Assembly: GCF_002113885.1 (NCBI RefSeq)
Contig: NW_018405386.1
Location: forward strand, 902,921 to 966,920
DNA from: Mizuhopecten yessoensis
Lineage: Eukaryota
Length of the DNA: 64,000 nucleotides
Reading direction: 5' to 3'
Both the position numbers and the translations under genes were made by a program. Below, piece after piece: positions 24,001-54,647 of the stretch (position 1 is the first letter of the stretch; each line of letters begins with the position of its first letter). A model generated the notes under the pieces. The model ran no database searches and was not told the origin of the DNA. It saw only the letters and a list, made by a program, of their open reading frames with translations.

Positions 24001-27000
24001 TCATAAATGGTATATCATATGTGGATAATTAGTGTTATATCATATCTGGAGAATTAAAGTTGTATTTATCATACCTGGATAATAAATGTTATATCATATC
24101 TGGATAATTAATGTTGTATTTATCATACCTGGATAATAAATGTTATACCACACTAGGATCTAGTGTAATATTATAGATATCACTTTATCTATTTTACATC
24201 AATTATTAAAGAAGTTATATCAACTTATATTAATCACTTTTTTTCGGCTTGGATGTTAGTACGCTGAGGGTCTTAATGTGGGCGGAAACCGGAGTACCCG
24301 GAGAAAATCCATGTGGGCAGGCAGGTGACCCCATACCTTTTCACGTCGATTTGGAGAATCAAACCCTGATTGTCTTGGTAAAAGGCAGGTGCCCTACCCA
24401 TTGTGCCAGAAGTGTAATATTACACCTGGATAATAGATGTTATGCCATACCTGGATAATCAAGTGTAATGCCACACCTGGATAATCAAGTGTAATACCAC
24501 ATCTGGATAATCAAGTGTAATACCACATCTGGATAATCAAGTGTAATACCACATCTGGATAATCAAGTGTAATACCACATCTGGATAATCAAGTGTAATG
24601 CTATACCTGGATAATCAAGTGTAATACCACATATGGATAATCGAGTGTATTACCACATCTGGATAATCAAGTGTAATACCACATCTGGATAATCAAGTGT
24701 AATACCACATATGGATAATGGAGTGTATTACCACATCTGGATAATCAAGTGTAATACCACATCTGGATAATCAAGTGTATTACCACATCTGGATAATCAA
24801 GTGTAATACCACATCTGGATAATCAAGTGTAATACCACATCTGGATAGTAAATAATACTGAACAGTTAAGAGTAATACCACACCTGGATTAGGAATGTCA
24901 CATCATACCTGGATAGCTATTTTTAGAGCCTTTACTCTCTGGTCGTTGTCCCAGGCTGATACTAGGGCCTGATTCAGCTCATCAATGCGGTTCACATAAT
25001 CCTGCTGACTAAGGTTCAACATCTCTTGAACAGATCCCTAAAACAATTTATTGAAAATGATCAAAATATCACCTTTAAGAAGATAATTCTTTTGATTGAC
25101 ATTACCATTGCGTGTAAAAATAATAATTAAAAAATGGGTAATAAACTAGAAAAGCACAAATCCACAAAGAAAGGGTAGAGACCACAATTTTGGACAATCT
25201 AAATGTTTTTAGAACAGAATCTTTATCAAATATTTTATTAACATTTTAGTAAAAAGATAAAATCAGATCAGATTTCCTTTTAAAGAGTGTTATTTACATC
25301 TAAATCAATAACTGATAAAATAGCTCCATGTGAAAGAAACATAATCTCCTCTTCAAATCCAGGATTTTCAAATTCGTTATTTGTCACTACAGGAAGTATA
25401 AAACAGGATGAAAGTGATAAACAAAATGAAGATCATAAACCAACCTCTTCAAAATCATCTAGCTGTTCGAGTCTGTTTCTCACTTTATCTGTCACAGTGG
25501 TGGCCGTCACTGCTTTGATGACCACTGTAACAAGAGCCACATGATTAAAATTAGAAACTACACACCATAGACAAACACAAAAAAATAAATTTGAGAATTG
25601 CTAGACGATGTTATAATATCGGATTGCATCTAACTGATCCTATTTTTTTTAATTCTATGGAAGGAAAAGGACGATTGCCCCCTCTTGAGCCCTAGATTGG
25701 CTGTGTCCTATTACAGGTTTGACAAAGTCAAATTTTAGGTCAGGACTAGCCTTGTACATGTTATTGATGTGTCCAGCTGCAAGATAATATCAGGTAAGTC
25801 TTGTTCCCAAGAAATTTATGCCTTGAATTCTCCAGTGTATATCAAAGAACTTGTGCTACCATTTGTTCGACCAGCACTTCTCAGGTCACAGTCTGGAGCC
25901 TCACCATCCTCGATACTCCATGGAGCCTCACCATCCTCGATACTCCATGGAGCCTCACCATCCTCTATACTCCAGGGATTACACTCACTTTCGCTCTGTG
26001 CACACCTGGAATATGTCTTAGCTATATCGAAGGCACGCGCCTAGCTATTTGATTGGTCTCAGGTAAAATAACCCGACCAATCGCTAGGCTGATACATGTA
26101 CTGTCCATTGAAGATTACAGAGGAGCGACACCCGGCTTATAGCCAGTCAAATTTACTGTTATGTGACCGGCATATTCTTTTGATGTATATCAAAGGATCA
26201 AACTAGTCTCCTCTGCACACTGAGCCTTTGATTTTGCTACGACTTATTCCAGGGGTGCAAAGAGCGAAACTGAGTATAATCCTTGGCGTATCGTGCCTTA
26301 CCGACTCTTCAGAAAACATGCACCATCCAATATTTCAACAAAACTGCAATAGAATTATAGAACAGCCTCTCAACCTTCCTTTGGAAATGGGGATTATTAG
26401 CTATTTTAAGAAAAGTTCTGAATAAACAATCTCTTTAATACTGATTTTAAGCTTGATATTCCTGTGTCTCATTGATGTGTCATTGTGTACTCATTTGCTG
26501 CACATTTTTGTCATACTTTTATCTAAACAAACATTGTCTTTTCAGTTCTTCTATGCTGTAAAGCGGTTCTCTTGAAATTTTTCTACAAACAGGGCACATC
26601 AGTAATTTTGCATATTATGTTCATACCTCTTTCCTTGTCTGATGCAGACAGAAAGCTGGTGGTAATGGAAAGTTTCTCAGAGGTACTGTACTTGGTAAGG
26701 ATGCTGGCTTTCTTGGCATTCCATGGCTCAAAAGTCTCATCCAGGTCATCACTTGGATTGCCTGTTTTAGTCTGCTACAATGAAACATATTCAAGATCTT
26801 TTTTAATGACATAAGTGACATGTGCTAAAAATAATTATACACACGCTTGCCAACTGTTTGAAATTTCTATGGGGGAGATTATGCCTGGTCAGAATTAAAA
26901 GCACAAATAAAATGTGTGTATGAACATCATGGGGAAAAAGTACACTTTTAAATGGCATCTGTTGAGTTGTTCTTCCAGGTGAAATCGTCAGATCTTAGAA

Positions 27001-30000
27001 AATAGAAATAGTTAAGCAAATTCACTGGTTGAAAATGCTCAATTTTTGGGTCCAAGATTGGGAGTCTCCCTCCAAAATAGGGAAAGTTGGCATGTATGTA
27101 TACTATTATTACCAAAATCAAACTTCAGTTCAACAAGGCAGAGTGTTGCAAGGCAATCCATAGTCCCCTACCAGTAATGATTTCTATATTTAACAAACAG
27201 TACACCTATGTCAGGAAGCATACACCAAAGTGATGATTGCACTCTGTTATCCCATAATGTCCTTGTACACCAAATCTGGTTACTCCAGATGAAATAGTAC
27301 AGAAGATATGCCCCGGACAAACTTTTTCAAAAGTTAAGTTCAAAGGTCAAGTCGAAGGTCACAGTGACCTAATTCTTGCACTTTGTACTCCGCCATCCCA
27401 AGATGTCCTTGTACACCAAATCTGGTTACTCCAGGTGAAATAGTATAGAAGATATGTTCCGGACAAACTCTTGGAAGGAAGGACGGACAGAGGGCAAACC
27501 CCAAGAACTGGTGGGGGTACTATAGAATATTCATACAATTATGAATTAGAAAACCAACTCTACTTTGGAAATATTTCTGTTTATAGATCAGAACCAATAA
27601 ATATAGACAGTCACTCCATATGCATGTCAGTGTGACAATCAACCTGTACAGGGGCCATTCTTTAATAGTCAAGGTCATGTTTAGGTAACCATTTTGTTTC
27701 CTTTAAAATAACCAGTTTATAATTACACTGTATTTATTATTTCTTGGAATACAGTAAAACCTTGATATAGTGCCCTTCGTTTCATTTGCCACCTTGTTTT
27801 CCGCCATGTATATTTCAATGTCCCTGTTTCTCGTTTTCTTAAGAATTCCTTTATACATTTCCCTCAATTTATTGCCAAAACCCCTTATAATGCCAAAATT
27901 ATGGACAAATGTTGGCAGTTTAACAAGATTTTACTGTATATTAATGAGTGTCACAGTACCTTGGCACACATGAATACCAAGATCAACTTTGAATGTAAAA
28001 ATATACGATTACATTTACAACAGTGTGTCACATTTCAAATTAATGTTTCAGAATCAGTAAAAAAGATACTGTAATTTTTTTGTTTACAGTACCTTCATTC
28101 GAAGAGTCTGATATGAAGTAATATGTCAAATATCTTTTATAATACAAAGTAATTAAATAGCTGGATGATTGATTTTTTAAAGTTAAACAAAAAAAAAACA
28201 CGCATTGATAACACAAAATTTATATCAAATTATGATTTAATTAAAATGCGTTGAAAAGTATACTGTATCAGACCATATAGTCATTTATAAAAACAATCAT
28301 CTTTTCTCATACTGCAACACTTCAATGTTATTTCACTTACAAGACGATTACAGAAAACTTGATGCAGGAGACTATCTATATTGACCAAAAATTGTACATA
28401 TAATATCTTATATTATTTTAAGACCTGTTCGAAAACTGTAAACATGATCACGGCAATTATAAAAAGACTTTCTCAAGGAGTACCTTCAGACTGGAGCTGC
28501 GGGTCTTTGATGCAGTCTGTGTCTGGACTTCAGCAGCAAACATGGACAGTGGGTCGGAACCTTCCAGTGCTGAGCTCAAGGGGTCCAACAGTTCAGTCTT
28601 TACAGCTTTGCTGGCCCCGGCTCCCTTCATTGGGGTCCCACGCTTTTCTGTACTTTTTACTTCCACCACCTGAAAAAATGTATTAATCCACCACTAGTTC
28701 AAATCAATCTGATTTTATATGCTAACAAAACCTTACTTAGGCAAGCATCTTTCCCATTGTTGATGTGTTGGGTTCTTATAAGGATAGAAGCTGTGATCAG
28801 CACAGAGAACAGCAGACATATGAGTCACACTGACATAGCTGCATTTCCAAAATGAGGTTATAACAGTGAAGATAATTTTAGGAATGATTGTTAACAGAAC
28901 TAGGTGGGGGTAACGGAACATAATCATCAACACACATTGGGTCTTAAGTAAAATGCATTAGTTTTCTATCAATTTACCTTAAAAGACATTATACTCAATG
29001 TTTGTTTTTTGTATCATTGCCCATAAATCAGTGAAATTCATTGATGAAAATTGATACATACACTGATTGTTTTCAATGGATGGCTTGTAGCCTCCTCCAG
29101 TGGTAGGTTTTCCTTTCTTGCTTCTAGAAGGTAGTCTCTTTTTCTTGGGGTCCTGGAAGGGAAACCATTAGATACATTACAACATTCCATTTCAGGCGTA
29201 CAGTTGAAAATTATTGGTGGCAATGTGGTTAAACAGTTCAATATGTTATTTGTATAGGTACATTTTGTCATTGTCATCCTGAAATGACCATATAGCTGTT
29301 GATAGGACGTTAAACAATACTAAATCAAATCAATGTAGTTGAATGACACATAATGCATGTTTTTTAACAATGCCACGCACTAGAAAAAATGGAAAATAAG
29401 AAATTTGAGTAAACTTATTTTTTCTGTTATTTTCCCCGAAAAAAATCCCTATTTCATTGGAATGCTTAGATTTTCATAAAATTGCCTCCACATTGTGAAA
29501 GTTTCAACTAGTTCTGCTGGTTAATTGGGAAAGGGTTGAGCCTCCTTAAGGTAAGAAATTAAATGTTGGCTTACTTTATTATTTCTTGCAGCCACAACTA
29601 ATTAAATGCAAATAAATAACTACTCTTTATAAAATGAAAATAAATATACAACATTGGATACAGCACCCTATCTAGCTAGAATAAGCCACTCTCAATACAA
29701 TTAACATATACATTTAATAATTAAATAATACATTAATCAATACAATTTATAAATATATAGCAGTGATGCCAATCAAACACATATCACAAGAACTATATCA
29801 ATACACTGTATCACTGGGTGGAATAACATTTTGCCTCAATATCACATTACAATTATGCTGTAACAGTTTGAATTGGGTACAATTAAACCATCATGTGAAA
29901 TTAAGGCATTTGAGTAACAGTTACTGTGTTTATTTTATTAAATATATGGGACAAAATGTGATGTCATTCTTCAAGATAGTTAATAAATATAACAATTAGA

Positions 30001-31018
30001 CACATTTGTGCACAAAGGTTAATCAATTTTGATGCCTGACTTTTTGTCAAAACGACAAACTGCTACATATACACTGTCTGTATGACGGGTGTGCATGCGC
30101 AATGAGCATGACATTTTGTATGTTTTCTTTTTATAGCTCAAATTGTGAATTCCTTTGTTTCCAACATAATGCACACCAATGTAGTGAAGGTGATACAATA
30201 TTTTAATTGTACAAAAAAAGAGATATCAAATCAAAGTAATCAAATTTTGAGCACCAATATGCTTTAATTATTGTATTACATGTAATTTGGGTTATGTTAA
30301 AAGAATGACACTGGCTTTCTTGTTCCTATAATGCGTACAAGAACTTCAACTGTTTTTAATTCACTTTATTTCCATGTCAGTGACAAAGTTGTTACTATAA
30401 ACAGTAACTGTTACCGGAACGAAGGATCATTTCTAACAAGAGGGGTTATGCATGCCCAGTCTCTTAATAAATCTATTAAATACAAAAATAGAATAATAAA
30501 ATAAACTTTGCATATGAACTATTCATGGCAAGCATAAGACTTTTTGAGAGTTAAAAACTGTGTTATTTGTGTTCATCCACTCTGTTAAAGTGGTTTATTT
30601 CCGTCTTTAAATGTATTATAACATATTTTTGTTTTGTCTTTTTTTTATAGAGACGAACCCCTGTGGCCAGTTCCAACGTGACGATAAGAAATGTTTCAGA
30701 AAATATAGAAAGATCAACATAAGGCGCCATTTAAGATGGACATAATCCTCAAGTTACAGATATGTTACTGTTTAGTATTCCCTGTTCTCCCAAACTTTCC
30801 CCTATCAGAGATTTGGTAAAATTATTTTTGGCCAGTAACAGAACGATTAATTTATCCTATATCTAATTTCAGCTTCATACAATATGTAGGCCTATTTAAC
30901 AATTTTGAATTATTGCGTATAACGTATCAGCAAGAATTAGAATCACAGCAGTCATTATGCATTTTATGACAATATCTTCGATTCTAGAAATCATAACAAA
31001 CCATTCGTAGGTCGCCAT
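9007..31018 (-). CDS. VPS35L: VPS35 endosomal protein-sorting factor-like (C16orf62; Retriever/Commander subunit), about 26 coding exons
   Basis: The GT-AG exon chain gives a continuous frame. ATG 31018 MATYEW (31002-31018); [17 protein letters not shown] (~29062-29153); ..[19 protein letters not shown] (~28483-28669); ..[28 protein letters not shown] (~26627-26774); [13 protein letters not shown] (~25445-25525); [43 protein letters not shown] (24909-25037); [29 protein letters not shown] (~23402-23486); [29 protein letters not shown] (~22678-22822). Further exons lie near 23011, 22303, 21705, 20104, 19503, 18988, 18471, 17896, 17285, 15844, 15424, 14276-14353, 12399, 11761, 11255, 10432 and 9511. 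The last exon is 9007-9105 (..KRLPLDSRA*). The motifs match what I recall of C16orf62/VPS35L. Confidence 0.95.
9895..10265. repeat. Old degenerate short-period repeat (ATGACAATGACCTT-like)
   Basis: Recurrent ATGACA/TGACCT motifs roughly every 20 nt. Confidence 0.6.
10959..11222. repeat. 62-bp minisatellite, about 4.3 copies (VPS35L intron)
   Basis: Unit ACAGGAATATCTCTGGACTTCGTGCCAGGACCCCAGAAGAGACTGATCTGTATAGAAGTGAT. Confidence 0.95.
12786..13064. mobile_element. MITE with ~50 bp TIRs (ATCCTC..CAGGGGTTATGCTCACTTTCGCTC), copy 1
   Basis: Long inverted ends. Homologous copies at ~25959-26295 and ~55185-55541. Confidence 0.75.
13278..14293. repeat. 69/70-bp minisatellite, about 14.5 copies, overlapping a VPS35L exon end
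   Basis: Unit GTCTACCATGACTGTTAACACACACTGTAATACCAGGAGAGTGAGCTATCTTACCCGTACAAAGTTCCCG, with two sequence variants. Confidence 0.97.
14462..15215 (+). mobile_element. Helentron/HINE-like non-autonomous element (internal ~155 bp repeats, GAA microsatellite)
   Basis: 5' AACTAG, subterminal TATGTCTCCCC repeated near the 3' end, tandem cores containing GACCTTTGACCTTGAGGTGAAGGTCACAGTGACC, and a (GAA)n tract. A near-identical partial copy lies at 50455-50906. Confidence 0.6.
16164..16556. mobile_element. PIF/Harbinger-like MITE nested in an older element
   Basis: TIR GGCTACATTCGCGTATCCCGGTTGAAACGGT / ACCGTTTCAACCGGATACGCGAATGTACCC with CTA/TAA (TWA-like) flanks. Confidence 0.7.
16922..17120. repeat. 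32-bp minisatellite, about 6 copies
   Basis: Unit AACTCAGAACAAGGTAAATCAACAAGTAATTT. Confidence 0.9.
20722..20905. mobile_element. MITE with ~35 bp TIRs
   Basis: GTATTCATGAAACCGTTCTCACGCTCAAGCATGGA ... TCCATGCTTGAGCATGAGAACGGTTACATGAATAC. Confidence 0.7.
21052..21142. mobile_element. ~85 bp TTAA MITE (family copy 1)
   Basis: TTAA flanks and TIR (C/T)TCATTCAYCCCTG. Near-identical copies at ~36848-36938 and ~48199-48280. Confidence 0.75.
24243..24410 (-). mobile_element. tRNA-derived SINE with V-type central domain
   Basis: GTGGGCGGAAACCGGAGTACCCGGAGAAAATCCA is the reverse complement of the V-SINE core TGGGTTTTCTCCGGGTACTCCGGTTTCCTCCCAC. Degenerate A/B boxes lie at the right end, and a second decayed copy is at ~46045-46205. 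Confidence 0.65.
24420..24915. repeat. 26-bp minisatellite (about 16 near-identical copies; diverged copies back to ~24010)
   Basis: Unit ATACCACATCTGGATAATCAAGTGTA. Confidence 0.95.
25959..26295. mobile_element. Same MITE family, copy 2 (opposite orientation)
   Basis: TIR ATCCTCTATACTCCAGGGATTACACTCACTTTCGCTC ... GAGCGAAACTGAGTATAATCCTTGG. The internal sequence is shared with the other copies. Confidence 0.7.
27131..27525 (+). mobile_element. HINE-like element (related family, GGAC microsatellite)
   Basis: 5' AACAAG, subterminal ATAGTCCCC, duplicated core (GTCCTTGTACACCAAATCTGGTTACTCCAG x2), GGAA/GGAC repeats, 3' GGGGGTACTAT. Confidence 0.55.
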
Positions 31019-31245
31019 TTTGAACAAGTAAGTCACATGACTTTTCTGGGACCGCCTCCTTTACTTGTAGTTTCGTATAAATAAACATGTTGAAAGGAAT
31101 AAAACAAAATGAAAAATTCAATGTTTGTTAATAAAAACAACGTTATTTTTTATTTTTATATTGAAACCTTTTGCTTTGATTTTCATTTATTACTGTCTGA
31201 TACGAAAATAAGATAACTTTGTCCTCGTAGTTCGTTTTACTAACG
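31019..31245. promoter_or_regulatory. Compact bidirectional promoter region, VPS35L / MED9
   Basis: The divergent ATGs are 227 nt apart. A YY1-like AAAATGGCGAC overlaps the VPS35L ATG, and a near-palindromic AAGTCACATGACTT E-box lies at 31030-31043. Confidence 0.7.
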
Positions 31246-34200
31246 ATGGCTGAACAAGCGGCAGAAAATGAATTGAGTTTCTTGGCTTTAGTCTGTGACG
31301 TTCTGAAAAGGTAATTATGATAAGAAATAGATATGATTAGACCTTCCTATCTTTATTGAAGATTGTTGTCTAACATATCTGCATATTTAAGGCGCTTTAT
31401 AGTTGTTTCAGGACCAAATCGATGACAGACGACTTACAACGTAACGGGCATATGATTGAGAAAAATGACATTGATTTTAAGGTGATGGTCGTCTGTAAAT
31501 GTTAAAACATTGTTCGATTGAGCGCAAGTCTGTAAGTTTAATAAATACTGCTGGCTGTACGCAGAGACATTTTACGAGTTCTGCGGATTATATTCTCAAA
31601 GGACTTTCTTGTAGGTATGAAGCCCGCGTAGCTCAGTCGGTAGAGCATCAGACTTTTAATCTGAGGGTCTAGGGTTCGAGTCCCTACGTGGGCGAAATAT
31701 TTTTTTCTTTTTTCCCCTCACTCCATTATAATAAAGAAATTCTTGCTTTCTTTATTTATAGGAAATAAAAATTTATGTTATGTTTATTTTTTCTTTGTTC
31801 GAAAATTATTAACATAAGAAACAGTTATGCATAGAATATGACATTGATCATTTGCAGGTCACAACAGCAGACATGTTAAAAATAATGATAAAAGTGAACA
31901 AGTATTTTTAATTTTTTGTGAACAAGGCAATTAGGTTATTCTTTCCTTTCATTATTTTTTCAAACAATCACTTTCCATTTCTGAGAAAAAATGGCCACAA
32001 TAATGCAGGTGTTCTTTTTGCACATTCACTTAAACATCCGACACTGTATTAATGTTGACTGAAATAACATCATTGAATGTAAAAAAAATAGAGGGTTCAG
32101 TATACATATATGTTTATGTATAATTCAACACAGCAAAAAGAGAGATCATCAGATGTGCAATGTTTTAGTGATAACTATGGCAATTAAGTCAAGCTCACTG
32201 AATTCATGTTGTCGAAAGAATGACCAAAAACGCCTGCACATTGCAGTGACATTGGCATAAAAGTATGGATGTAGAAACAGTACAATACTAGGTAATTATT
32301 TTGTTAACAGAATGATGAAAAACTTATATGGTCACAAATTGTCTTTTTTTTTCATGTTAGCTTCTTGTAGACTTGTAGAATTATAGAAAATCTGTAAATC
32401 TCATAAAAAAAACCATACATGAGTTATCATTAATTTTAAAAGGAACATTTGTACATTGTTAATGACAAAATCAATGCAGGCTATGATAAAATTTATACAT
32501 TTTGACTTGACACAAGTTTTGTGATAATAATTCCAAGTTTTCACAAACTAATAAACAATGCTGCAGTGCACATGGTCTCCAAGCTATGATCAAATATATC
32601 GTAAACATTTTGATAAAACACATTGACAATCACAAAATGATTCCAATTTGTAACTTGTACAGACCAAAAACTAAAAAAAACCACTGGTCAGCAGGCTTAC
32701 ATAAAACACATTTTGACCGGACACAAGTGGCAAGTGCTATTACACAATGACTGCTGGTTTGTTACAGACTCAAAAAAATAATTCCGACTGGTCTGCTGAC
32801 TATGATAAAATACATGTATACAGCCTACACAGGGCCCCCGGTTTATCAGACAGGGCACTTTTTGTGTCCGTTTAAAGGACACATTCCCAACTGAAAAGGT
32901 GTAAGATTTTTTCCCAATTGCCCCTTTGAAATTCCCAATTGGGAACCAAAAAAGTAATTGCATTAATATAGATCAATTCCTCACAGTTGATTGAGTTACA
33001 AGTCGGAAGGACAAAATCATTATGTTGTCTAAACCGTCTCATTTCCCCCCAAAAAATGATATTTTAATTGGACACTAATTATAATTTGGGGGTTTAATAT
33101 CTTTAAAATGTATATCATTTATATTCAAGAATATATATGTTGTAATGTTTTTGGTATACAATCCTCCAAGGACTTACCTGATATATTAAAGATTTTTTTC
33201 TGTAATTGACCTTATACGCACCCTGGCACTAAACAATATGAAAAATGAGAATGACTGCTGAACCTTCACCGGTTCTTGTAAAAGGTCACAGTAGACATCT
33301 TTTCAAGTACAGTACCAAGTCTAATAAATAGGGGCCCATATAAGGTGCTTATTAGTTCAAATACAGTAATAGAAAAATATACACATTACAACAATGTCAC
33401 TTGTATCTAGATCATAAAATGAAATAAACATAAAGATAACAAACTAATTTGATCGTTGAAACTCATTGAAACAATATCAACTATGTGCAATATCACGATC
33501 AGAGTCCATAGAGAATCCCAAACGAGTGATGGTTGGTCATCATGTTTATATAACTTGATTTTGAGTTAGTTAATTTTCAAATTGTATAAAGATACAAGAT
33601 TAACCAAGTGTCTTTTACAATTTGAAAATTAAGTTATGAGAGTTAAATAAACGTGATAATCAACCATCACAAGTTTGGGAACTATTTTTCTCCCACAACG
33701 TTCAGATCTTATATCTAGAAAGCTATGTATATGTTTCGCTTGGGAAAACATACTTCCTGTTTTCAATAGGGGAAACAATTTGGATTTTTGTACTATGACG
33801 TCACAATGGAAGATGACATCGCAAAGTATTGTCACTGGACGTCATTATTAGAAGATTGACCCATTAAATCAGGTCTAGGGTGTTACAGACTAGTCCAAAA
33901 TGAGTATCAACACCTAGCAGGTTTATCCAATGAGTTGGTAGGAAACCTTTAGTGGTTGTGGGAGAAAAAATTGTTCTCAATTATCTGGCTCAATCTTTAC
34001 CAGATATATACTAGAGTGTATAATTTGATAGCCTGATTGTCTCCCCTAGATAATAAAGCTATCAAGAATTATGCAAGTCTAGTGGAAGAGCTGGAGGCCA
34101 TAAAATGCCAACTGGACAAAGGAACACTTCTTTGAATTTCTTCTTGACCAGTTTGCTTTAATATTTCCTATGGATGCCAACTGAAAGCAGTAAAGTGCTC

Positions 34201-34546
34201 ATTATATTAACTGTTACACAAAATAGTTGTTTGATACGATGGAGACAGAGAGCAGCATAATTGTCTCGTAGAATTGTTTATATTTATTCATTATTGAAAT
34301 CACTTGTAAAACTTTTTTTCTTTTCTCTTCAGTATTGAAAAAGAATCGCACGATGTGACTCAGAAGATGACAGATTTGAAGAGTCAACTACAGCGAGCAA
34401 GAGATTGCGTGGAGAAAATGCCAGGAATCCAGTACAGCAAGACAGAGCAGCTTAAACAGATCGACGTACTTCGTAACCAAATGGCCGTCAAAACCGAGTT
34501 ACTGCAGAAGTACAAACACATGCAGACATTTGATCTGTCTCAGTAA
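31246..34546 (+). CDS. MED9: Mediator of RNA polymerase II transcription subunit 9 (2 exons: 31246-31310, 34333-34546; 92 aa)
   Basis: MAEQAAENELSFLALVCDVLK(AG|gtaatt ... ttctcttcag|T)S-IEKESHDVTQKMTDLKSQLQRARDCVEKMPGIQYSKTEQLKQIDVLRNQMAVKTELLQKYKHM..*. The MPGI...EQ...L..Q...K.ELLQKYK pattern is the Med9 signature, and the exon phases are compatible. Confidence 0.92.
31622..31694 (+). tRNA. tRNA-Lys (anticodon TTT), intronic in MED9
   Basis: 73 nt: GCCCGCGTAGCTCAGTCGGTAGAGCATCAGACTTTTAATCTGAGGGTCTAGGGTTCGAGTCCCTACGTGGGCG. Acceptor stem GCCCGCG/CGTGGGC, anticodon arm TCAGA-CTTTTAA-TCTGA, T stem TAGGG/CCCTA, A and B boxes intact. A T-run terminator follows at ~31700. Confidence 0.97.
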
Positions 34547-34803
34547 CAGATTCTACAGATCATCAGGGAGTGCATACAGGAAAGACTGCATCATATATCG
34601 GTGTTCATCGATACTGCATCACTTATATACTTTGTAACTCAACATTATTTTTTATATCTAGTTGAAACTTGTGGTTCAATTGAAAACATATTATTTTCAT
34701 AAGTGAACTATTTTGAGATATTATTGTGTATATTTTTGTTAATTAGAATACTTACAGTATTTTATCTTTACTTGCTCTTGTGGGGGAAAAAAAATACATC
34801 CAA

Positions 34804-35340
34804 ATGTCGGACGTTAAAAATGACGATGTGCACAGGCACCCTATATTTCACAAAGACCCTGAGCAATGGTTGCAGTATATGAACAAAGAGGTTCTTGTTG
34901 TGACAGAGGACGGATCCGAGTGGTCGGGATGGGTTTACACCGTAGACCCTGTCTCAGAAAGCATGGTTCTCTTCCAGTTTGAAGAAGAAAGGACCAGGAT
35001 GGAGATTGTGATGGGCCACGCTATCAGAAATGTTACCATTCTCAACAGCGAGACACAGACTCACAAAGATAAGTTTGACAAGCTCTTTAGAACGAGAGAA
35101 CAGGAAAGTTTCTCAGAGGAGGAGATAGAAAGACGAAGAAATGTTTTGAAGTTATGGCTCGTGAAGAATCTTCTACCCGTCTCTACTACAGGGAATAATG
35201 GCGAGATACTTTCCATATCTGATGCCTTGTATATAGAGCCTCCATATGGACCTGAGAACTGTCGCAGCACAAATGAGATCATTCTTGGAAGGATTCAGGG
35301 CCTCATTAAGAACATGCCAGCTGATCATGAAAACTGGTGA
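34804..35340 (+). CDS. GEMIN6: Gem-associated protein 6 (SMN complex, Sm-like fold), single coding exon, 178 aa
   Basis: MSDVKND..DPEQWLQYMNKEVLVVTEDGSEWSGWVYTVDPVSESMVL...IVMGHAIRNV...LKLWLVKNLLPV...LYIEPPYGPENCRSTNEIILGRIQGLI. The W.YT.DPVS and PPYGPENC.S.NEIIL.R.Q motifs are typical of Gemin6. Confidence 0.93.
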   Translation: MSDVKNDDVHRHPIFHKDPEQWLQYMNKEVLVVTEDGSEWSGWVYTVDPVSESMVLFQFEEERTRMEIVMGHAIRNVTILNSETQTHKDKFDKLFRTREQESFSEEEIERRRNVLKLWLVKNLLPVSTTGNNGEILSISDALYIEPPYGPENCRSTNEIILGRIQGLIKNMPADHENW

Positions 35341-35400
35341 TTTTCATTATCAACCATTTTCACTATCAAGTATAAATTCAAAGACTCCATTTTTTCATAA

Positions 35401-35655
35401 TAAGGCCAAATAAAGTAAATCTAGTGTTTCCGCTATTACCCTACCTACCCTAGATTTTGTGCTTTAAACCATAATTTTTTTATTGGCATTTAGTGATATG
35501 CACTGTTAAAGTCAGAACTCCTGCTCTATATAAGCATATTATAAATATTATAAGCATATTATAAATATTTTCCAAAATAATAACAATTCCCTACCTACCT
35601 ACCCAATTTTTTGAAGTTGATAGCGGAAGCACAAGTTTTTTTTGTTTGACCTAAG
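35401..35655. mobile_element. Harbinger/ISL2EU-like MITE in the GEMIN6 3' region
   Basis: TAAGGCCAAATAAA..GTGTTTCCGCTAT ... ATAGCGGAAGCAC..TTTGTTTGACCTAA inverted ends, with internal CCTACCTACC repeats. Confidence 0.55.
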
Positions 35656-36847
35656 GTCATTTACAAATACAATGGTTTGTAGTCATTTATAAGATTGATA
35701 ATAAAATTTGTCAACAACAATTTACACTATATATACGTGTTCTAATGTTTTTGATCCGCTAGCATGTTTATCCATGTTAAATTTGCTACACTCTGTTTTC
35801 TTGTTACTAAAAAAACTAGGCCTTGTTGTTTGAAGTTTCTAAATCAATTTAACTTTATTAAAATATTAAATTTATTTTAAATTTTAAATTATCATATAAA
35901 GACCAAAACAGTATTATATTTCTTTTTCAATTGAAATACCCGGTAATACGTTTTGAAAATTTGAGTTTGCTGTCAAATAGCATCTTCAAACAACTGGGCC
36001 CAGAGCTTTACTGTAACTATGGGCCATCTTATCAGTAATGCACATCAATTTAGTTTCGTTCACAAAATAATATACAGGCTATACATGTATTTAGGTTAAA
36101 ACACTGAATGACTGGTGCATTAATCACAGCTAATTGATCCGTCGATTCTTACCATTCTGCTGTTATTTTTGTAGTCGGCATCCCTAACATTTTGGTGTTC
36201 CCAAACTCTTCTTTCAAATTTCTTCATTAATGCTTTACAGATTTGGTCCTATATCTCTGCTTTTAGCTTGTAGATTAGGTCCCCAGGATTTTCTGGCTAC
36301 GTTTTCTGTTCTCCATACATTAGATTCTCTGCAATGTTCCTTGTACAGAAAAATATGGTTGCCACTTGCTGTAATACTGATTCCAGCTCGTACTGTAATG
36401 GTCAAAATCAGTTTTAAACATTTCCAAGCTCATCTTCAATGATTCTGATGTACCTGTCTTCCATTTCTGGAATCTTCTTTTCCTTCCACGAGGTGAAAAC
36501 AAGCCAGTATTTTCCGTTCACTATGTGATGGTAGAAGGCCATGATTATTTCTTGCTAAAGTCTAGTAACAGTCCTGAAACAAAGAACTGTGTATTTTTAA
36601 AAATGTGTTAATAAATGGCATAACATTCTGTTTTAATTGGAGGCACTGATGTATTTGGAGCTATTTAAAGTTTTGAAACCTTCTTACTTCTTATATTAAA
36701 GACAAAGAGTATATTTTGTGCTAAAATGCTTACCAGGTAGTACCCAATAGTAATAAAATAATGGACTTGAGCAAGGCTTTGATAGTACAGCCGTACCTAC
36801 TGCAGAGACCACCTCTATAAAGAAGCACCTGTCTTAAGAGACCACAT

Positions 36848-39708: not shown

Positions 39709-39868
39709 AATAACTTCATTTACCAACTACATAGAAAAAATCATTTTGCAGCCGTTACATATGTAGAGCACTAAAATTATCATATTGTGCCTCAGAAGTA
39801 CTCCTGGAAAATATAGCACCAAACATTGAAAGACTAGGGTAATAGTCATTGTGTATACAGGAACAGCA

Positions 39869-54647
<14,779 letters not shown>

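What the first reader, a model, noticed from the sequence alone, without database searches (positions are those of the whole stretch)
31246..35340. MED9 and GEMIN6 may be one locus: a shared first exon by alternative 3' acceptor, or a bicistronic mRNA
Seen: GEMIN6 starts only 257 nt after the MED9 stop on the same strand. The spacer (34547-34803) has no ATG, no AATAAA/ATTAAA and no obvious promoter-like motif. It carries a candidate acceptor aatacttacag| at 34757 followed by TATT, the same cag|TATT context as the MED9 exon-2 acceptor at 34332. Splicing MED9 exon 1 (phase 2, ...AAA AG|gt) to 34758 gives an open, in-frame MAEQAAENELSFLALVCDVLKS-ILSLLALVGEKKYIQ-MSDVKND..., a 215-aa N-extended Gemin6. 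Inference: one promoter and one first exon could yield either a Mediator subunit or an SMN-complex subunit by acceptor choice. Alternatively Gemin6 could be translated as the second cistron of the MED9 mRNA by re-initiation across an ATG-free spacer. Caveats: frame compatibility has a 1/3 chance prior, and a competing AG at 34746 would be out of frame.
Basis: partly seen in the sequence, partly recalled or inferred. Interest (0 to 1): 0.85.

Follow-up and report, generated by a model that had tools for sequence, protein, structure and literature searches.

The report
Conserved two-gene MED9–GEMIN6 messenger RNA
In this scallop a Mediator subunit gene (MED9) and an SMN-complex subunit gene (GEMIN6) sit 257 bases apart and most likely share one messenger RNA, an arrangement kept in other molluscs and in annelid worms; the proposed shared-first-exon fusion protein is not supported.

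Summary
The window is from Mizuhopecten yessoensis. MED9 has two coding exons (31246-31310 and 34333-34546). A single-exon GEMIN6 ORF (34804-35340) follows on the same strand after a 257-nt spacer. The spacer has no ATG (5.8 expected; 2 of 5000 shuffles) and no AATAAA or ATTAAA.

The first interpretation, a shared first exon with an alternative acceptor at 34757, is not supported:
- The AG is absent in Pecten and Argopecten.
- The extension lies in a Mizuhopecten-specific ~36-nt insertion.
- The fused frame hits stops in two other bivalves.
- No Gemin6 relative starts with the MED9 exon-1 peptide.

The second interpretation, a bicistronic mRNA, is supported, mostly from relatives:
- Argopecten RNA contigs (2 runs) and oyster RNA contigs (several runs) carry spliced MED9, the spacer and the full GEMIN6 ORF in one piece.
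- Spacers are 41 nt in oyster, 11 nt in the annelid Paralvinella and 31-32 nt in two other worm-like contigs. That leaves no room for a 3' end plus a promoter.
- The tandem is also present in gastropods and absent in amphioxus.

I found no paper describing this gene pair. How Gemin6 is translated is inferred, not shown.

The parts
30960..31245 (.). Shared upstream region between a divergent VPS35L-like gene (minus strand, likely first codons MATYEW ending near 31018) and MED9. It is the presumed bidirectional promoter and the MED9 5' UTR.
   Evidence: 71% identical over ~370 nt to Pecten maximus L002 4197-4568, which lies between VPS35L and Med9 there. ORF list. The promoter function is inferred.
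31246..31310 (+). MED9 coding exon 1 (21 codons plus 2 nt, phase 2), with donor GT at 31311.
   Evidence: P0127 starts MAEQAAENELSFLALVCDVLKS; the Argopecten RNA contig aligns to the Pecten exon 1.
31311..34332 (+). MED9 intron (3022 nt).
   Evidence: The orthologous intron is removed in Argopecten RNA contigs mapped on the Pecten genome.
34333..34546 (+). MED9 coding exon 2, ending in TAA.
   Evidence: Pfam Med9 2.4e-16. Single copy in the genome.
34547..34803 (+). Intercistronic spacer. It is ATG-free, lacks AATAAA/ATTAAA and has no unusual RNA structure.
   Evidence: 0 ATG against 5.8 expected, P = 0.0004; no canonical poly(A) hexamer. (folding z-score -0.14). (no Rfam family). (the spacer's words are held by probable RNA assemblies).
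34724..34749 (+). U-rich block TTGTGTATATTTTTGTTAATTAGAAT. It is the best conserved part of the spacer among scallops, and a similar string lies in the oyster 41-nt spacer.
   Evidence: Function unknown; in AT-rich DNA the similarity could be chance.
34747..34757 (+). It is weak and not conserved.
   Evidence: About 40% pyrimidines at -20..-4, against a nearly pure pyrimidine tract at the real acceptor at 34332. The AG is replaced by AT in Pecten and TT in Argopecten.
34758..34793 (+). Mizuhopecten-specific insertion of about 36 nt (TATTTTATC...GGGGGAAAAAAAATA). It supplies most of the proposed N-terminal extension.
   Evidence: Alignment.
34804..35340 (+). GEMIN6 ORF, a single exon of 178 aa, with A at -3 of its ATG.
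   Evidence: Pfam Gemin6 plus Gemin6_C. 84-85% identical to scallop Gemin6 proteins. Single copy in the genome.
35409..35414 (+). First AATAAA after the MED9 stop, 69 nt past the GEMIN6 stop. It is the likely common poly(A) signal.
   Evidence: The Argopecten RNA contig L017 likewise ends just after an AATAAA about 55 nt past the GEMIN6 stop. Use of this site is inferred.

Best explanation
MED9 and GEMIN6 form one transcription unit that yields a mature dicistronic mRNA. Transcription starts at the promoter shared with the divergent VPS35L-like gene. The 3-kb MED9 intron is removed and the 257-nt spacer is kept. The only 3'-end signal lies after GEMIN6. Two separate proteins are made: the 92-aa MED9 from the first AUG and the 178-aa Gemin6 from the AUG at 34804. 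No fusion protein is made.

The arrangement is old. It occurs in scallops, oysters, gastropods and annelids. It is absent in amphioxus and in some worm-like contigs.

Shown: the gene order; the lack of ATG and of poly(A) hexamers in the spacer; spliced two-ORF RNA contigs in Argopecten and oyster; and very short spacers in oyster and annelids.

Inferred: that the Mizuhopecten RNA is one continuous molecule. Also inferred: that Gemin6 is translated from it by ribosomes that finish MED9, stay on the RNA, scan the AUG-free spacer and start again (termination-reinitiation). The likeliest alternative route to Gemin6 is a shorter transcript.
For: - Gene models and families.
- Pecten maximus genome: VPS35L(-), Med9(+) and Gemin6(+) with a 182-nt spacer.
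- Argopecten RNA contigs L017 and L018, from two runs, hold the 5' UTR, MED9 with exon 1 joined to exon 2, a 196-nt spacer and the full GEMIN6 ORF. On the Pecten genome they align as exon 1 plus one colinear 964-nt block, so the intron is removed and the spacer kept.
- Oyster (the cluster includes Magallana gigas XP_065921594.1): the spacer is 41 nt. Spliced MED9 plus GEMIN6 lie on single contigs L004, L019, L022, L023, L024 and L026 from different runs.
- Annelid Paralvinella palmiformis: the spacer is 11 nt, with a TGATG overlap in frame with Gemin6. Two further worm-like contigs have 31-32 nt.
- Gastropods: Pomacea has the tandem. Patella has consecutive locus tags for the two genes.
- No AATAAA or ATTAAA lies in the spacer of the window, Pecten, Argopecten, the L008 bivalve or oyster.
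- The window's spacer has 0 ATG against 5.8 expected.
- Every spacer ATG in the other species opens a uORF of 1-20 codons that ends before the Gemin6 AUG, or is in frame with it.
- 14 assemblies that the tool guesses to be RNA, from 8 studies, hold 92-100% of the sampled words of 34333-35500. The spacer makes up about a quarter of those words.
- Both genes are single copy in the assembly.
Against: - The runs are only guessed to be RNA, and word shares cannot show continuity.
- De Bruijn contigs can chain overlapping transcripts. Oyster contigs also run on into the convergent SNF2-like mRNA.
- A 257-nt spacer is long enough to hold a GEMIN6 start site of its own.
- Re-initiation after a 92-codon ORF is normally inefficient (general knowledge).
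- The complete lack of ATG is special to this species. Pecten has 2 against 3.0 expected, and the unnamed scallop L001 has 3 against 4.8.
- The Pomacea spacer has AATAAA and seven uORFs, so the unit may be split there.
Confidence: 0.65

Rival explanations
1. There are two functional mRNAs. MED9 transcripts read on through GEMIN6 because they lack an earlier 3' end. Gemin6 protein, however, comes mainly from a shorter monocistronic transcript that starts in the spacer or inside the MED9 gene body (intron or exon 2). The dicistronic RNA then serves MED9 only.
For: - The 257-nt spacer could hold a start site. It contains a conserved TATA-like GTATATTTTTG at 34728-34738.
- An ATG-free leader is also what a normal 5' UTR looks like.
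- Several oyster and other bivalve contigs carry intron sequence directly upstream of exon 2 (L003, L005, L027, L028, L008). These could be transcripts started in the intron.
- Contigs cannot separate overlapping transcripts.
Against: - With spacers of 11-41 nt in annelids and oyster, a separate start site would have to lie inside MED9. The transcript would then still carry MED9-frame AUGs ahead of GEMIN6.
- In oyster the U-rich block ends 10 nt before the AUG, too close to act as a TATA box for it.
- The lack of ATG covers the whole 257 nt starting from the MED9 stop, not only the part near GEMIN6.
Confidence: 0.25
2. One reading: MED9 exon 1 is spliced either to exon 2 (giving MED9) or to the acceptor at 34757. 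The second choice would give a 215-aa Gemin6 carrying the 22-residue MED9 N-terminus plus 15 spacer-encoded residues.
For: - The frame is open in the window.
- Both sites read cag|TATT.
- In oyster an AG just before the ATG (..gattcgaaag|tATG) would also be in frame.
Against: - The AG is not conserved in Pecten or Argopecten, and the extension lies in a lineage-specific insertion.
- The fusion frame hits TGA in Argopecten and makes TGA at the junction in the L007/L008 bivalve.
- The polypyrimidine tract is weak, and a competing AG lies 11 nt upstream.
- Argopecten RNA contigs run unbroken through exon 1, exon 2 and the spacer.
- No database Gemin6 relative has a MED9-like N-terminus.
- Gemin6 proteins start at the same place across phyla.
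Confidence: 0.04
3. An operon of the nematode or tunicate kind: a polycistronic precursor is cut, and the downstream GEMIN6 mRNA receives a trans-spliced leader at an acceptor such as 34757.
For: - The genes are on the same strand with short spacers.
- AG acceptor-like sites lie just upstream of the GEMIN6 ATG in several species.
Against: - No contig shows a foreign leader joined near the GEMIN6 ATG. All 20 or so bivalve contigs examined are colinear with MED9 exon 2.
- The spacer has no poly(A) signal to end the upstream mRNA.
- Trans-splicing and operons are reported absent in annelids (PMC7854359).
- I know of no report of them in molluscs (own knowledge; the search found none).
Confidence: 0.02

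Closest known systems
Drosophila dicistronic mRNAs translated directly (Adh-Adhr, stoned)
   Same: Two complete ORFs for distinct proteins lie on one mature, spliced mRNA without trans-splicing, separated by a short non-coding spacer. For Adh-Adhr the spacer is reported to stimulate internal initiation (review PMC2776167 and its references 167-169).
   Different: The gene pair is different and functionally unrelated (a Mediator subunit and an SMN-complex subunit). The lineage is different (Mollusca and Annelida). The arrangement is kept across phyla, with spacers from 11 to about 300 nt. Translation of the second ORF has not been tested here.
Mammalian CERS1(LASS1)-GDF1 bicistronic transcript
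   Same: It is a conserved bicistronic structure encoding two unrelated proteins (PMC2776167, references 171 and 174).
   Different: It belongs to vertebrates and involves different genes. In the present case the upstream ORF is very short (92 codons) and the spacer is depleted of AUG.
Termination-reinitiation on long upstream ORFs (calicivirus VP1/VP2, influenza B M1/BM2, human LINE-1 ORF1/ORF2). This comparison rests on my own knowledge, not on a tool result.
   Same: The stop of ORF 1 and the start of ORF 2 overlap or lie close: UGAUG in Paralvinella and 31-41 nt in other worm-like contigs and oyster. The second ORF has no cap-proximal AUG of its own.
   Different: The window's spacer of 257 nt is far longer than in the viral cases. 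No 18S-complementary motif was tested, and no experiment exists.
Spliced-leader operons of nematodes and tunicates
   Same: Unrelated housekeeping genes are transcribed together from one promoter.
   Different: There is no spliced leader and no poly(A) signal between the genes, and the two-ORF RNA appears in the spliced form.

Membership tests
Directly translated eukaryotic dicistronic mRNA | Two complete, non-overlapping ORFs for distinct proteins on the same strand | tested here: met
   MED9 at 31246-31310 plus 34333-34546; GEMIN6 at 34804-35340; Pfam hits.
Directly translated eukaryotic dicistronic mRNA | One mature (spliced) transcript carries both ORFs | tested here: inconclusive
   Met in relatives: spliced two-ORF RNA contigs in Argopecten and oyster. 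Contigs are not single molecules.
Directly translated eukaryotic dicistronic mRNA | No 3'-end processing signal between the ORFs | tested here: met
   No AATAAA or ATTAAA in 34547-34803; the first AATAAA is at 35409. The same holds for Pecten, Argopecten, the L008 bivalve and oyster. Actual cleavage sites were not measured.
Directly translated eukaryotic dicistronic mRNA | The downstream ORF is translated from the two-ORF RNA | not testable with these tools
   Only indirect support: an AUG-free or harmless-uORF spacer and A at -3 of the Gemin6 AUG.
   The AG at 34756-34757 is AT in Pecten and TT in Argopecten, and the pyrimidine tract is weak.
   A stop occurs in Argopecten and in the L007/L008 bivalve. 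No MED9-like N-terminus on any Gemin6 relative.
Spliced-leader trans-spliced operon | A common leader joined at an acceptor before the downstream gene, with a poly(A) signal after the upstream gene | tested here: not met
   All contigs are colinear through the spacer and there is no poly(A) hexamer. The literature reports none in annelids.
Mediator subunit 9 (Pfam PF07544) | Profile match above the curated cut-off | tested here: met
   60 bits against a cut-off of 26.9 on exon 2.
Gemin6 (Pfam PF06372 plus PF20417) | Sm-like domain and C-terminal domain both above the cut-off | tested here: met
   64.7 bits (cut-off 23.9) and 81.6 bits (cut-off 33.4). 120 relatives found.

The most novel reading that the evidence does not exclude
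MED9-GEMIN6 is an ancient lophotrochozoan dicistronic mRNA, shared by molluscs and annelids. In it the SMN-complex subunit Gemin6 is made only by ribosomes that have just finished translating the 92-codon Mediator subunit, through termination-reinitiation. The supporting features are a UGAUG overlap in Paralvinella, spacers of 11-41 nt in oyster and worm-like contigs, and an AUG-purged 257-nt spacer in Mizuhopecten. The output of the two unrelated housekeeping proteins would then be coupled in translation. This would be a natural cellular model for efficient re-initiation after a long ORF.
Probability: 0.3. Interest if true: 0.7.

Novelty: new member of a known kind. Interest (0 to 1): 0.6.

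Why it matters
[quoted passage not shown] Most known ones are restricted to one lineage. A MED9-GEMIN6 pair kept in tandem from annelids to bivalves and gastropods, with spacers as short as 11 nt, would be one of the most deeply conserved examples.

It would also provide a natural series of spacers (an overlap, then 11, 31, 41, 119, about 190 and 257 nt) for asking how eukaryotic ribosomes reach a second ORF after a 92-codon first one.

There is a practical point as well. Annotation pipelines treat the two as separate genes, so expression, knock-down or CRISPR work on MED9 in oysters and scallops may also affect Gemin6.

I found no paper that describes this pair.

Tried and rejected
- **Read laying.** I asked for window 30600-36500 on four probable RNA runs. 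I sent those places to no search tool afterwards. Scripts used 30000-31620 and 31700 onward only.
- **The look-up of encoding contigs with the window's own Gemin6 and with P0006.** Neither is on record. Owenia is withheld.
- **Pomacea Logan contigs.** They are colinear with the genome, hence DNA or unspliced RNA, and say nothing about transcripts.
- **MED9 isoform X1.** A search with exon 2 and with P0127 gave few candidates and no isoform X1.
- **N-extended Gemin6 proteins of 188-237 aa.** Their extensions are unrelated to MED9.
- **RNA structure or a known RNA family in the spacer.** Folding z-score is -0.14, and there is no Rfam hit of note, so nothing supports a structured IRES.
- **My recollection that a Drosophila Gemin is encoded bicistronically.** It was checked and dropped. 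Matera et al. (PMC6385987) show that Gemin6-8 are lost in Drosophila, and the paper says nothing of the kind.
- **Earlier findings of this scan.** Nothing relevant.
- **Joined exon models.** I did not build or search the joined sequences (MED9 exon 1 plus exon 2, or exon 1 plus 34758 onward). Exons were searched apart by reference, and the database protein P0127 stood in for spliced MED9.
Full report
**1. What is in the sequence.**

- MED9 starts at 31246. Exon 1 ends ...CTGAAAAG at 31310 (phase 2), followed by GTAATT.
- Exon 2 follows a strong acceptor (ttttttcttttctcttcag|) at 34333 and ends with TAA at 34546.
- After a 257-nt spacer, an intronless 178-codon ORF runs from 34804 to 35340.
- Pfam gives Med9 for exon 2 (2.4e-16), and Gemin6 (7.8e-18) plus Gemin6_C (3.4e-23) for the second ORF.

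The spliced MED9 product equals database protein P0127, which NCBI names Mizuhopecten yessoensis MED9-like isoform X2. It sits on a 2,561,261-base contig, the same length as the contig that holds the window's Gemin6. So the window is from the Yesso scallop. Both genes are single copy in that assembly.

**2. Is the spacer unusual?**

It has no ATG, against 5.8 expected from dinucleotide-preserving shuffles (2 of 5000 shuffles reach zero). Neighbouring non-coding DNA has 3.3-5.9 ATG per 257 nt.

It has no AATAAA or ATTAAA. The first AATAAA after the MED9 stop is at 35409, 69 nt past the GEMIN6 stop.

It folds no better than shuffled sequence (z = -0.14) and matches no Rfam family.

**3. Read evidence in this species.**

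The look-up of sequencing runs listed 14 assemblies that it guesses to be RNA. Each has 4-90 million letters of contigs, and they come from 8 studies. They hold 92-100% of the sampled 31-mers of 34333-35500.

Words touching the spacer are about a quarter of that stretch, so these assemblies contain the spacer. This fits a transcribed spacer. It proves neither that the runs are RNA nor that the RNA is continuous.

I have therefore no junction counts and no transcript ends for this species.

**4. Relatives: gene order.**

MED9 is followed by GEMIN6 on the same strand in these genomes and contigs:

| Species or contig | Spacer |
|---|---|
| Pecten maximus (VPS35L divergent upstream, as in the window) | 182 nt |
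| An unnamed scallop, L001 | 230 nt |
| Argopecten | 196 nt |
| An unnamed bivalve, L007/L008 | 119 nt |
| Oyster (cluster includes Magallana gigas) | 41 nt |
| Pomacea canaliculata | 304 nt |
| Paralvinella palmiformis (annelid) | 11 nt |
| Metagenome contigs L036 and L037, whose MED9 resembles Paralvinella's | 31-32 nt |

- Contig L070 also carries MED9 exons directly upstream of GEMIN6. I read its spacer as about 41 nt by eye, but the script run for it was in the wrong frame, so I do not rely on that figure.
- In Saccostrea both genes lie on a contig of the same length.
- In Patella caerulea they carry consecutive locus tags, 005874 and 005875.
- The tandem is absent in Branchiostoma. There Gemin6 has introns and its neighbours are MMgT and Nop52.
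- None of about 30 further metagenome contigs (L040-L069, roughly 36-44% identical Gemin6) gave a MED9 match by tblastn. Many hold little upstream sequence. In one of them, L043, I also listed the ORFs about 1 kb upstream and found none like MED9.

**5. Relatives: transcripts.**

Argopecten contigs L017 and L018 come from two different runs. They contain a 28-nt 5' UTR and MED9 with exon 1 joined to exon 2 (...CTGAAAAG|TATCGAAAAAG...). They then carry the whole spacer and the whole GEMIN6 ORF.

Mapped on the Pecten genome they give two blocks. One is exon 1. The other is a single colinear 964-nt block from exon 2 to the GEMIN6 3' UTR. So the 3-kb intron is removed and the spacer is retained.

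In oyster, contigs L004, L019, L022, L023, L024 and L026 come from different runs. They show the exon 1|exon 2 junction followed by the 41-nt spacer and GEMIN6.

With a 41-nt spacer, ordinary reads must cross from one ORF into the other. With 11 nt in Paralvinella there is no room for a 3' end plus a promoter.

One caveat applies. These are de Bruijn contigs, which can chain overlapping transcripts. Some oyster contigs continue into the convergent SNF2-like mRNA.

**6. The alternative-acceptor model.**

In the four-scallop alignment the AG at 34756-34757 corresponds to AT in Pecten and TT in Argopecten. Positions 34758-34793 are an insertion private to Mizuhopecten. So the acceptor and most of the 15-codon extension are lineage-specific.

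The site is also weak. It has about 40% pyrimidines upstream, and another AG lies 11 nt before it.

The same splice would run into TGA in Argopecten. It would create TGA at the junction in the L007/L008 bivalve, where exon 1 ends ...TG and the acceptor reads cag|A.

In oyster an AG just before the ATG would be in frame. Two in-frame cases out of four are what chance gives.

None of the 120 Gemin6 relatives starts with the ENELSFL motif of MED9 exon 1, including those of 188-237 aa. I rate this model at about 4%.

**7. How Gemin6 is made.**

This part is inference.

The MED9 AUG has a strong context (A at -3, G at +4), and MED9 contains further AUGs. Leaky scanning to 34804 is therefore unlikely.

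The spacer shows no sign of a structured element.

What the spacers share is that scanning ribosomes would meet nothing harmful. There are no AUGs in the window, in the L008 bivalve, in oyster or in the two worm-like contigs L036 and L037. Elsewhere there are only uORFs of 1-20 codons that end before the Gemin6 AUG, or AUGs in frame with it.

Summed over the five other bivalves, 6 AUGs are seen against about 14 expected.

In Paralvinella the MED9 stop and an in-frame AUG overlap as UGAUG. This is the classic layout for termination-reinitiation (own knowledge).

I therefore favour re-initiation after MED9 termination. The main rival is that a shorter GEMIN6 transcript starts in the spacer or inside MED9 and provides most of the protein (about 25%).

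A spliced-leader operon is very unlikely:
- No leader is joined on any contig.
- No poly(A) signal lies between the genes.
- Trans-splicing and operons are reported absent in annelids (PMC7854359).

**8. Comparison with what is known.**

Directly translated dicistronic mRNAs are known from Drosophila (stoned, Adh-Adhr) and mammals (LASS1/CERS1-GDF1), as reviewed in PMC2776167. The present locus works like these and meets the structural criteria. Translation of the second ORF is untested.

Full-text searches for Gemin6 with Med9, bicistronic or dicistronic found no description of this pair.

I had recalled a bicistronic Gemin locus in Drosophila. The paper (PMC6385987) shows instead that Gemin6-8 are lost in flies, so I dropped that comparison.

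- The fusion-by-acceptor reading is not supported.
- The bicistronic reading is supported. Mature two-ORF RNA is shown in relatives, and gene order with very short spacers extends the arrangement across Mollusca and Annelida.
- It is a new member of a known kind, of moderate to good interest.
- The open points are molecule-level proof in Mizuhopecten and the mechanism of Gemin6 translation.

Noticed in passing
L034 831-847 (Paralvinella palmiformis; also L033 and L031): The MED9 stop and an ATG in frame with Gemin6 overlap as TGATG. The annotated Gemin6 ATG is 11 nt further on. This is the layout typical of termination-reinitiation.
   Followed up: partly
L025 1-70; L022 1800-1850; L023 1-60 (oyster RNA contigs): The sequence 5' of MED9 exon 2 or within exon 1 differs between contigs. 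L025 joins another upstream exon (...CATGTCATTAGAAAAG|CATTGAC). L022 and L023 diverge 5' of GAAAACGAACTG. These may be alternative first exons, alleles or assembly chimeras.
   Followed up: no
L009 5697-6000 (Pomacea canaliculata): The 304-nt spacer holds two AATAAA and seven small uORFs, unlike the bivalve spacers. The pair may be expressed as two mRNAs in this snail.
   Followed up: partly
window 34724-34749; L004 296-320: A U-rich string, TTGTGTAT(AT)TTTT..TTGAT, is shared by scallop spacers and the oyster 41-nt spacer. It could be a functional RNA element or a chance match in AT-rich sequence.
   Followed up: no
window 34758-34793: An insertion of about 36 nt relative to Pecten and Argopecten, ending in a G5A8 run just before the conserved ACATCCAAATG start context.
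   Followed up: partly
window 24400-31020 (minus strand) and 39800-45000 (minus strand): Exons of the upstream VPS35L-like gene and of the downstream large gene align to Pecten maximus L002 in the same order. VPS35L and MED9 are head to head, about 230 nt apart. The gap after GEMIN6 is about 4.4 kb here against about 0.9 kb in Pecten.
   Followed up: partly
window 35440-35600: ccctacctaccc-like motifs flank a 21-nt tandem duplicate (tataagcatattataaatat) downstream of the GEMIN6 poly(A) signal. This may be a small inserted repeat.
   Followed up: no
P0127 (protein encoded at window 31246-34546): NCBI names this MED9 protein 'isoform X2', which implies another annotated isoform. I could not find it among proteins of 38-161 aa.
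   Followed up: partly
L040-L069 (metagenome contigs) and L029 (Branchiostoma): Gemin6 without MED9 upstream. The tandem is therefore not universal: it was either lost in some worm-like lineages or never present outside Mollusca and some Annelida.
   Followed up: partly
P0134 (unnamed scallop, cluster of P0004): A 194-aa Gemin6 variant in which the stop is read as W and the protein continues for 13 residues (ENWWQRKLYKAEGNLH). This is probably a stop-codon polymorphism or a sequencing error.
   Followed up: no
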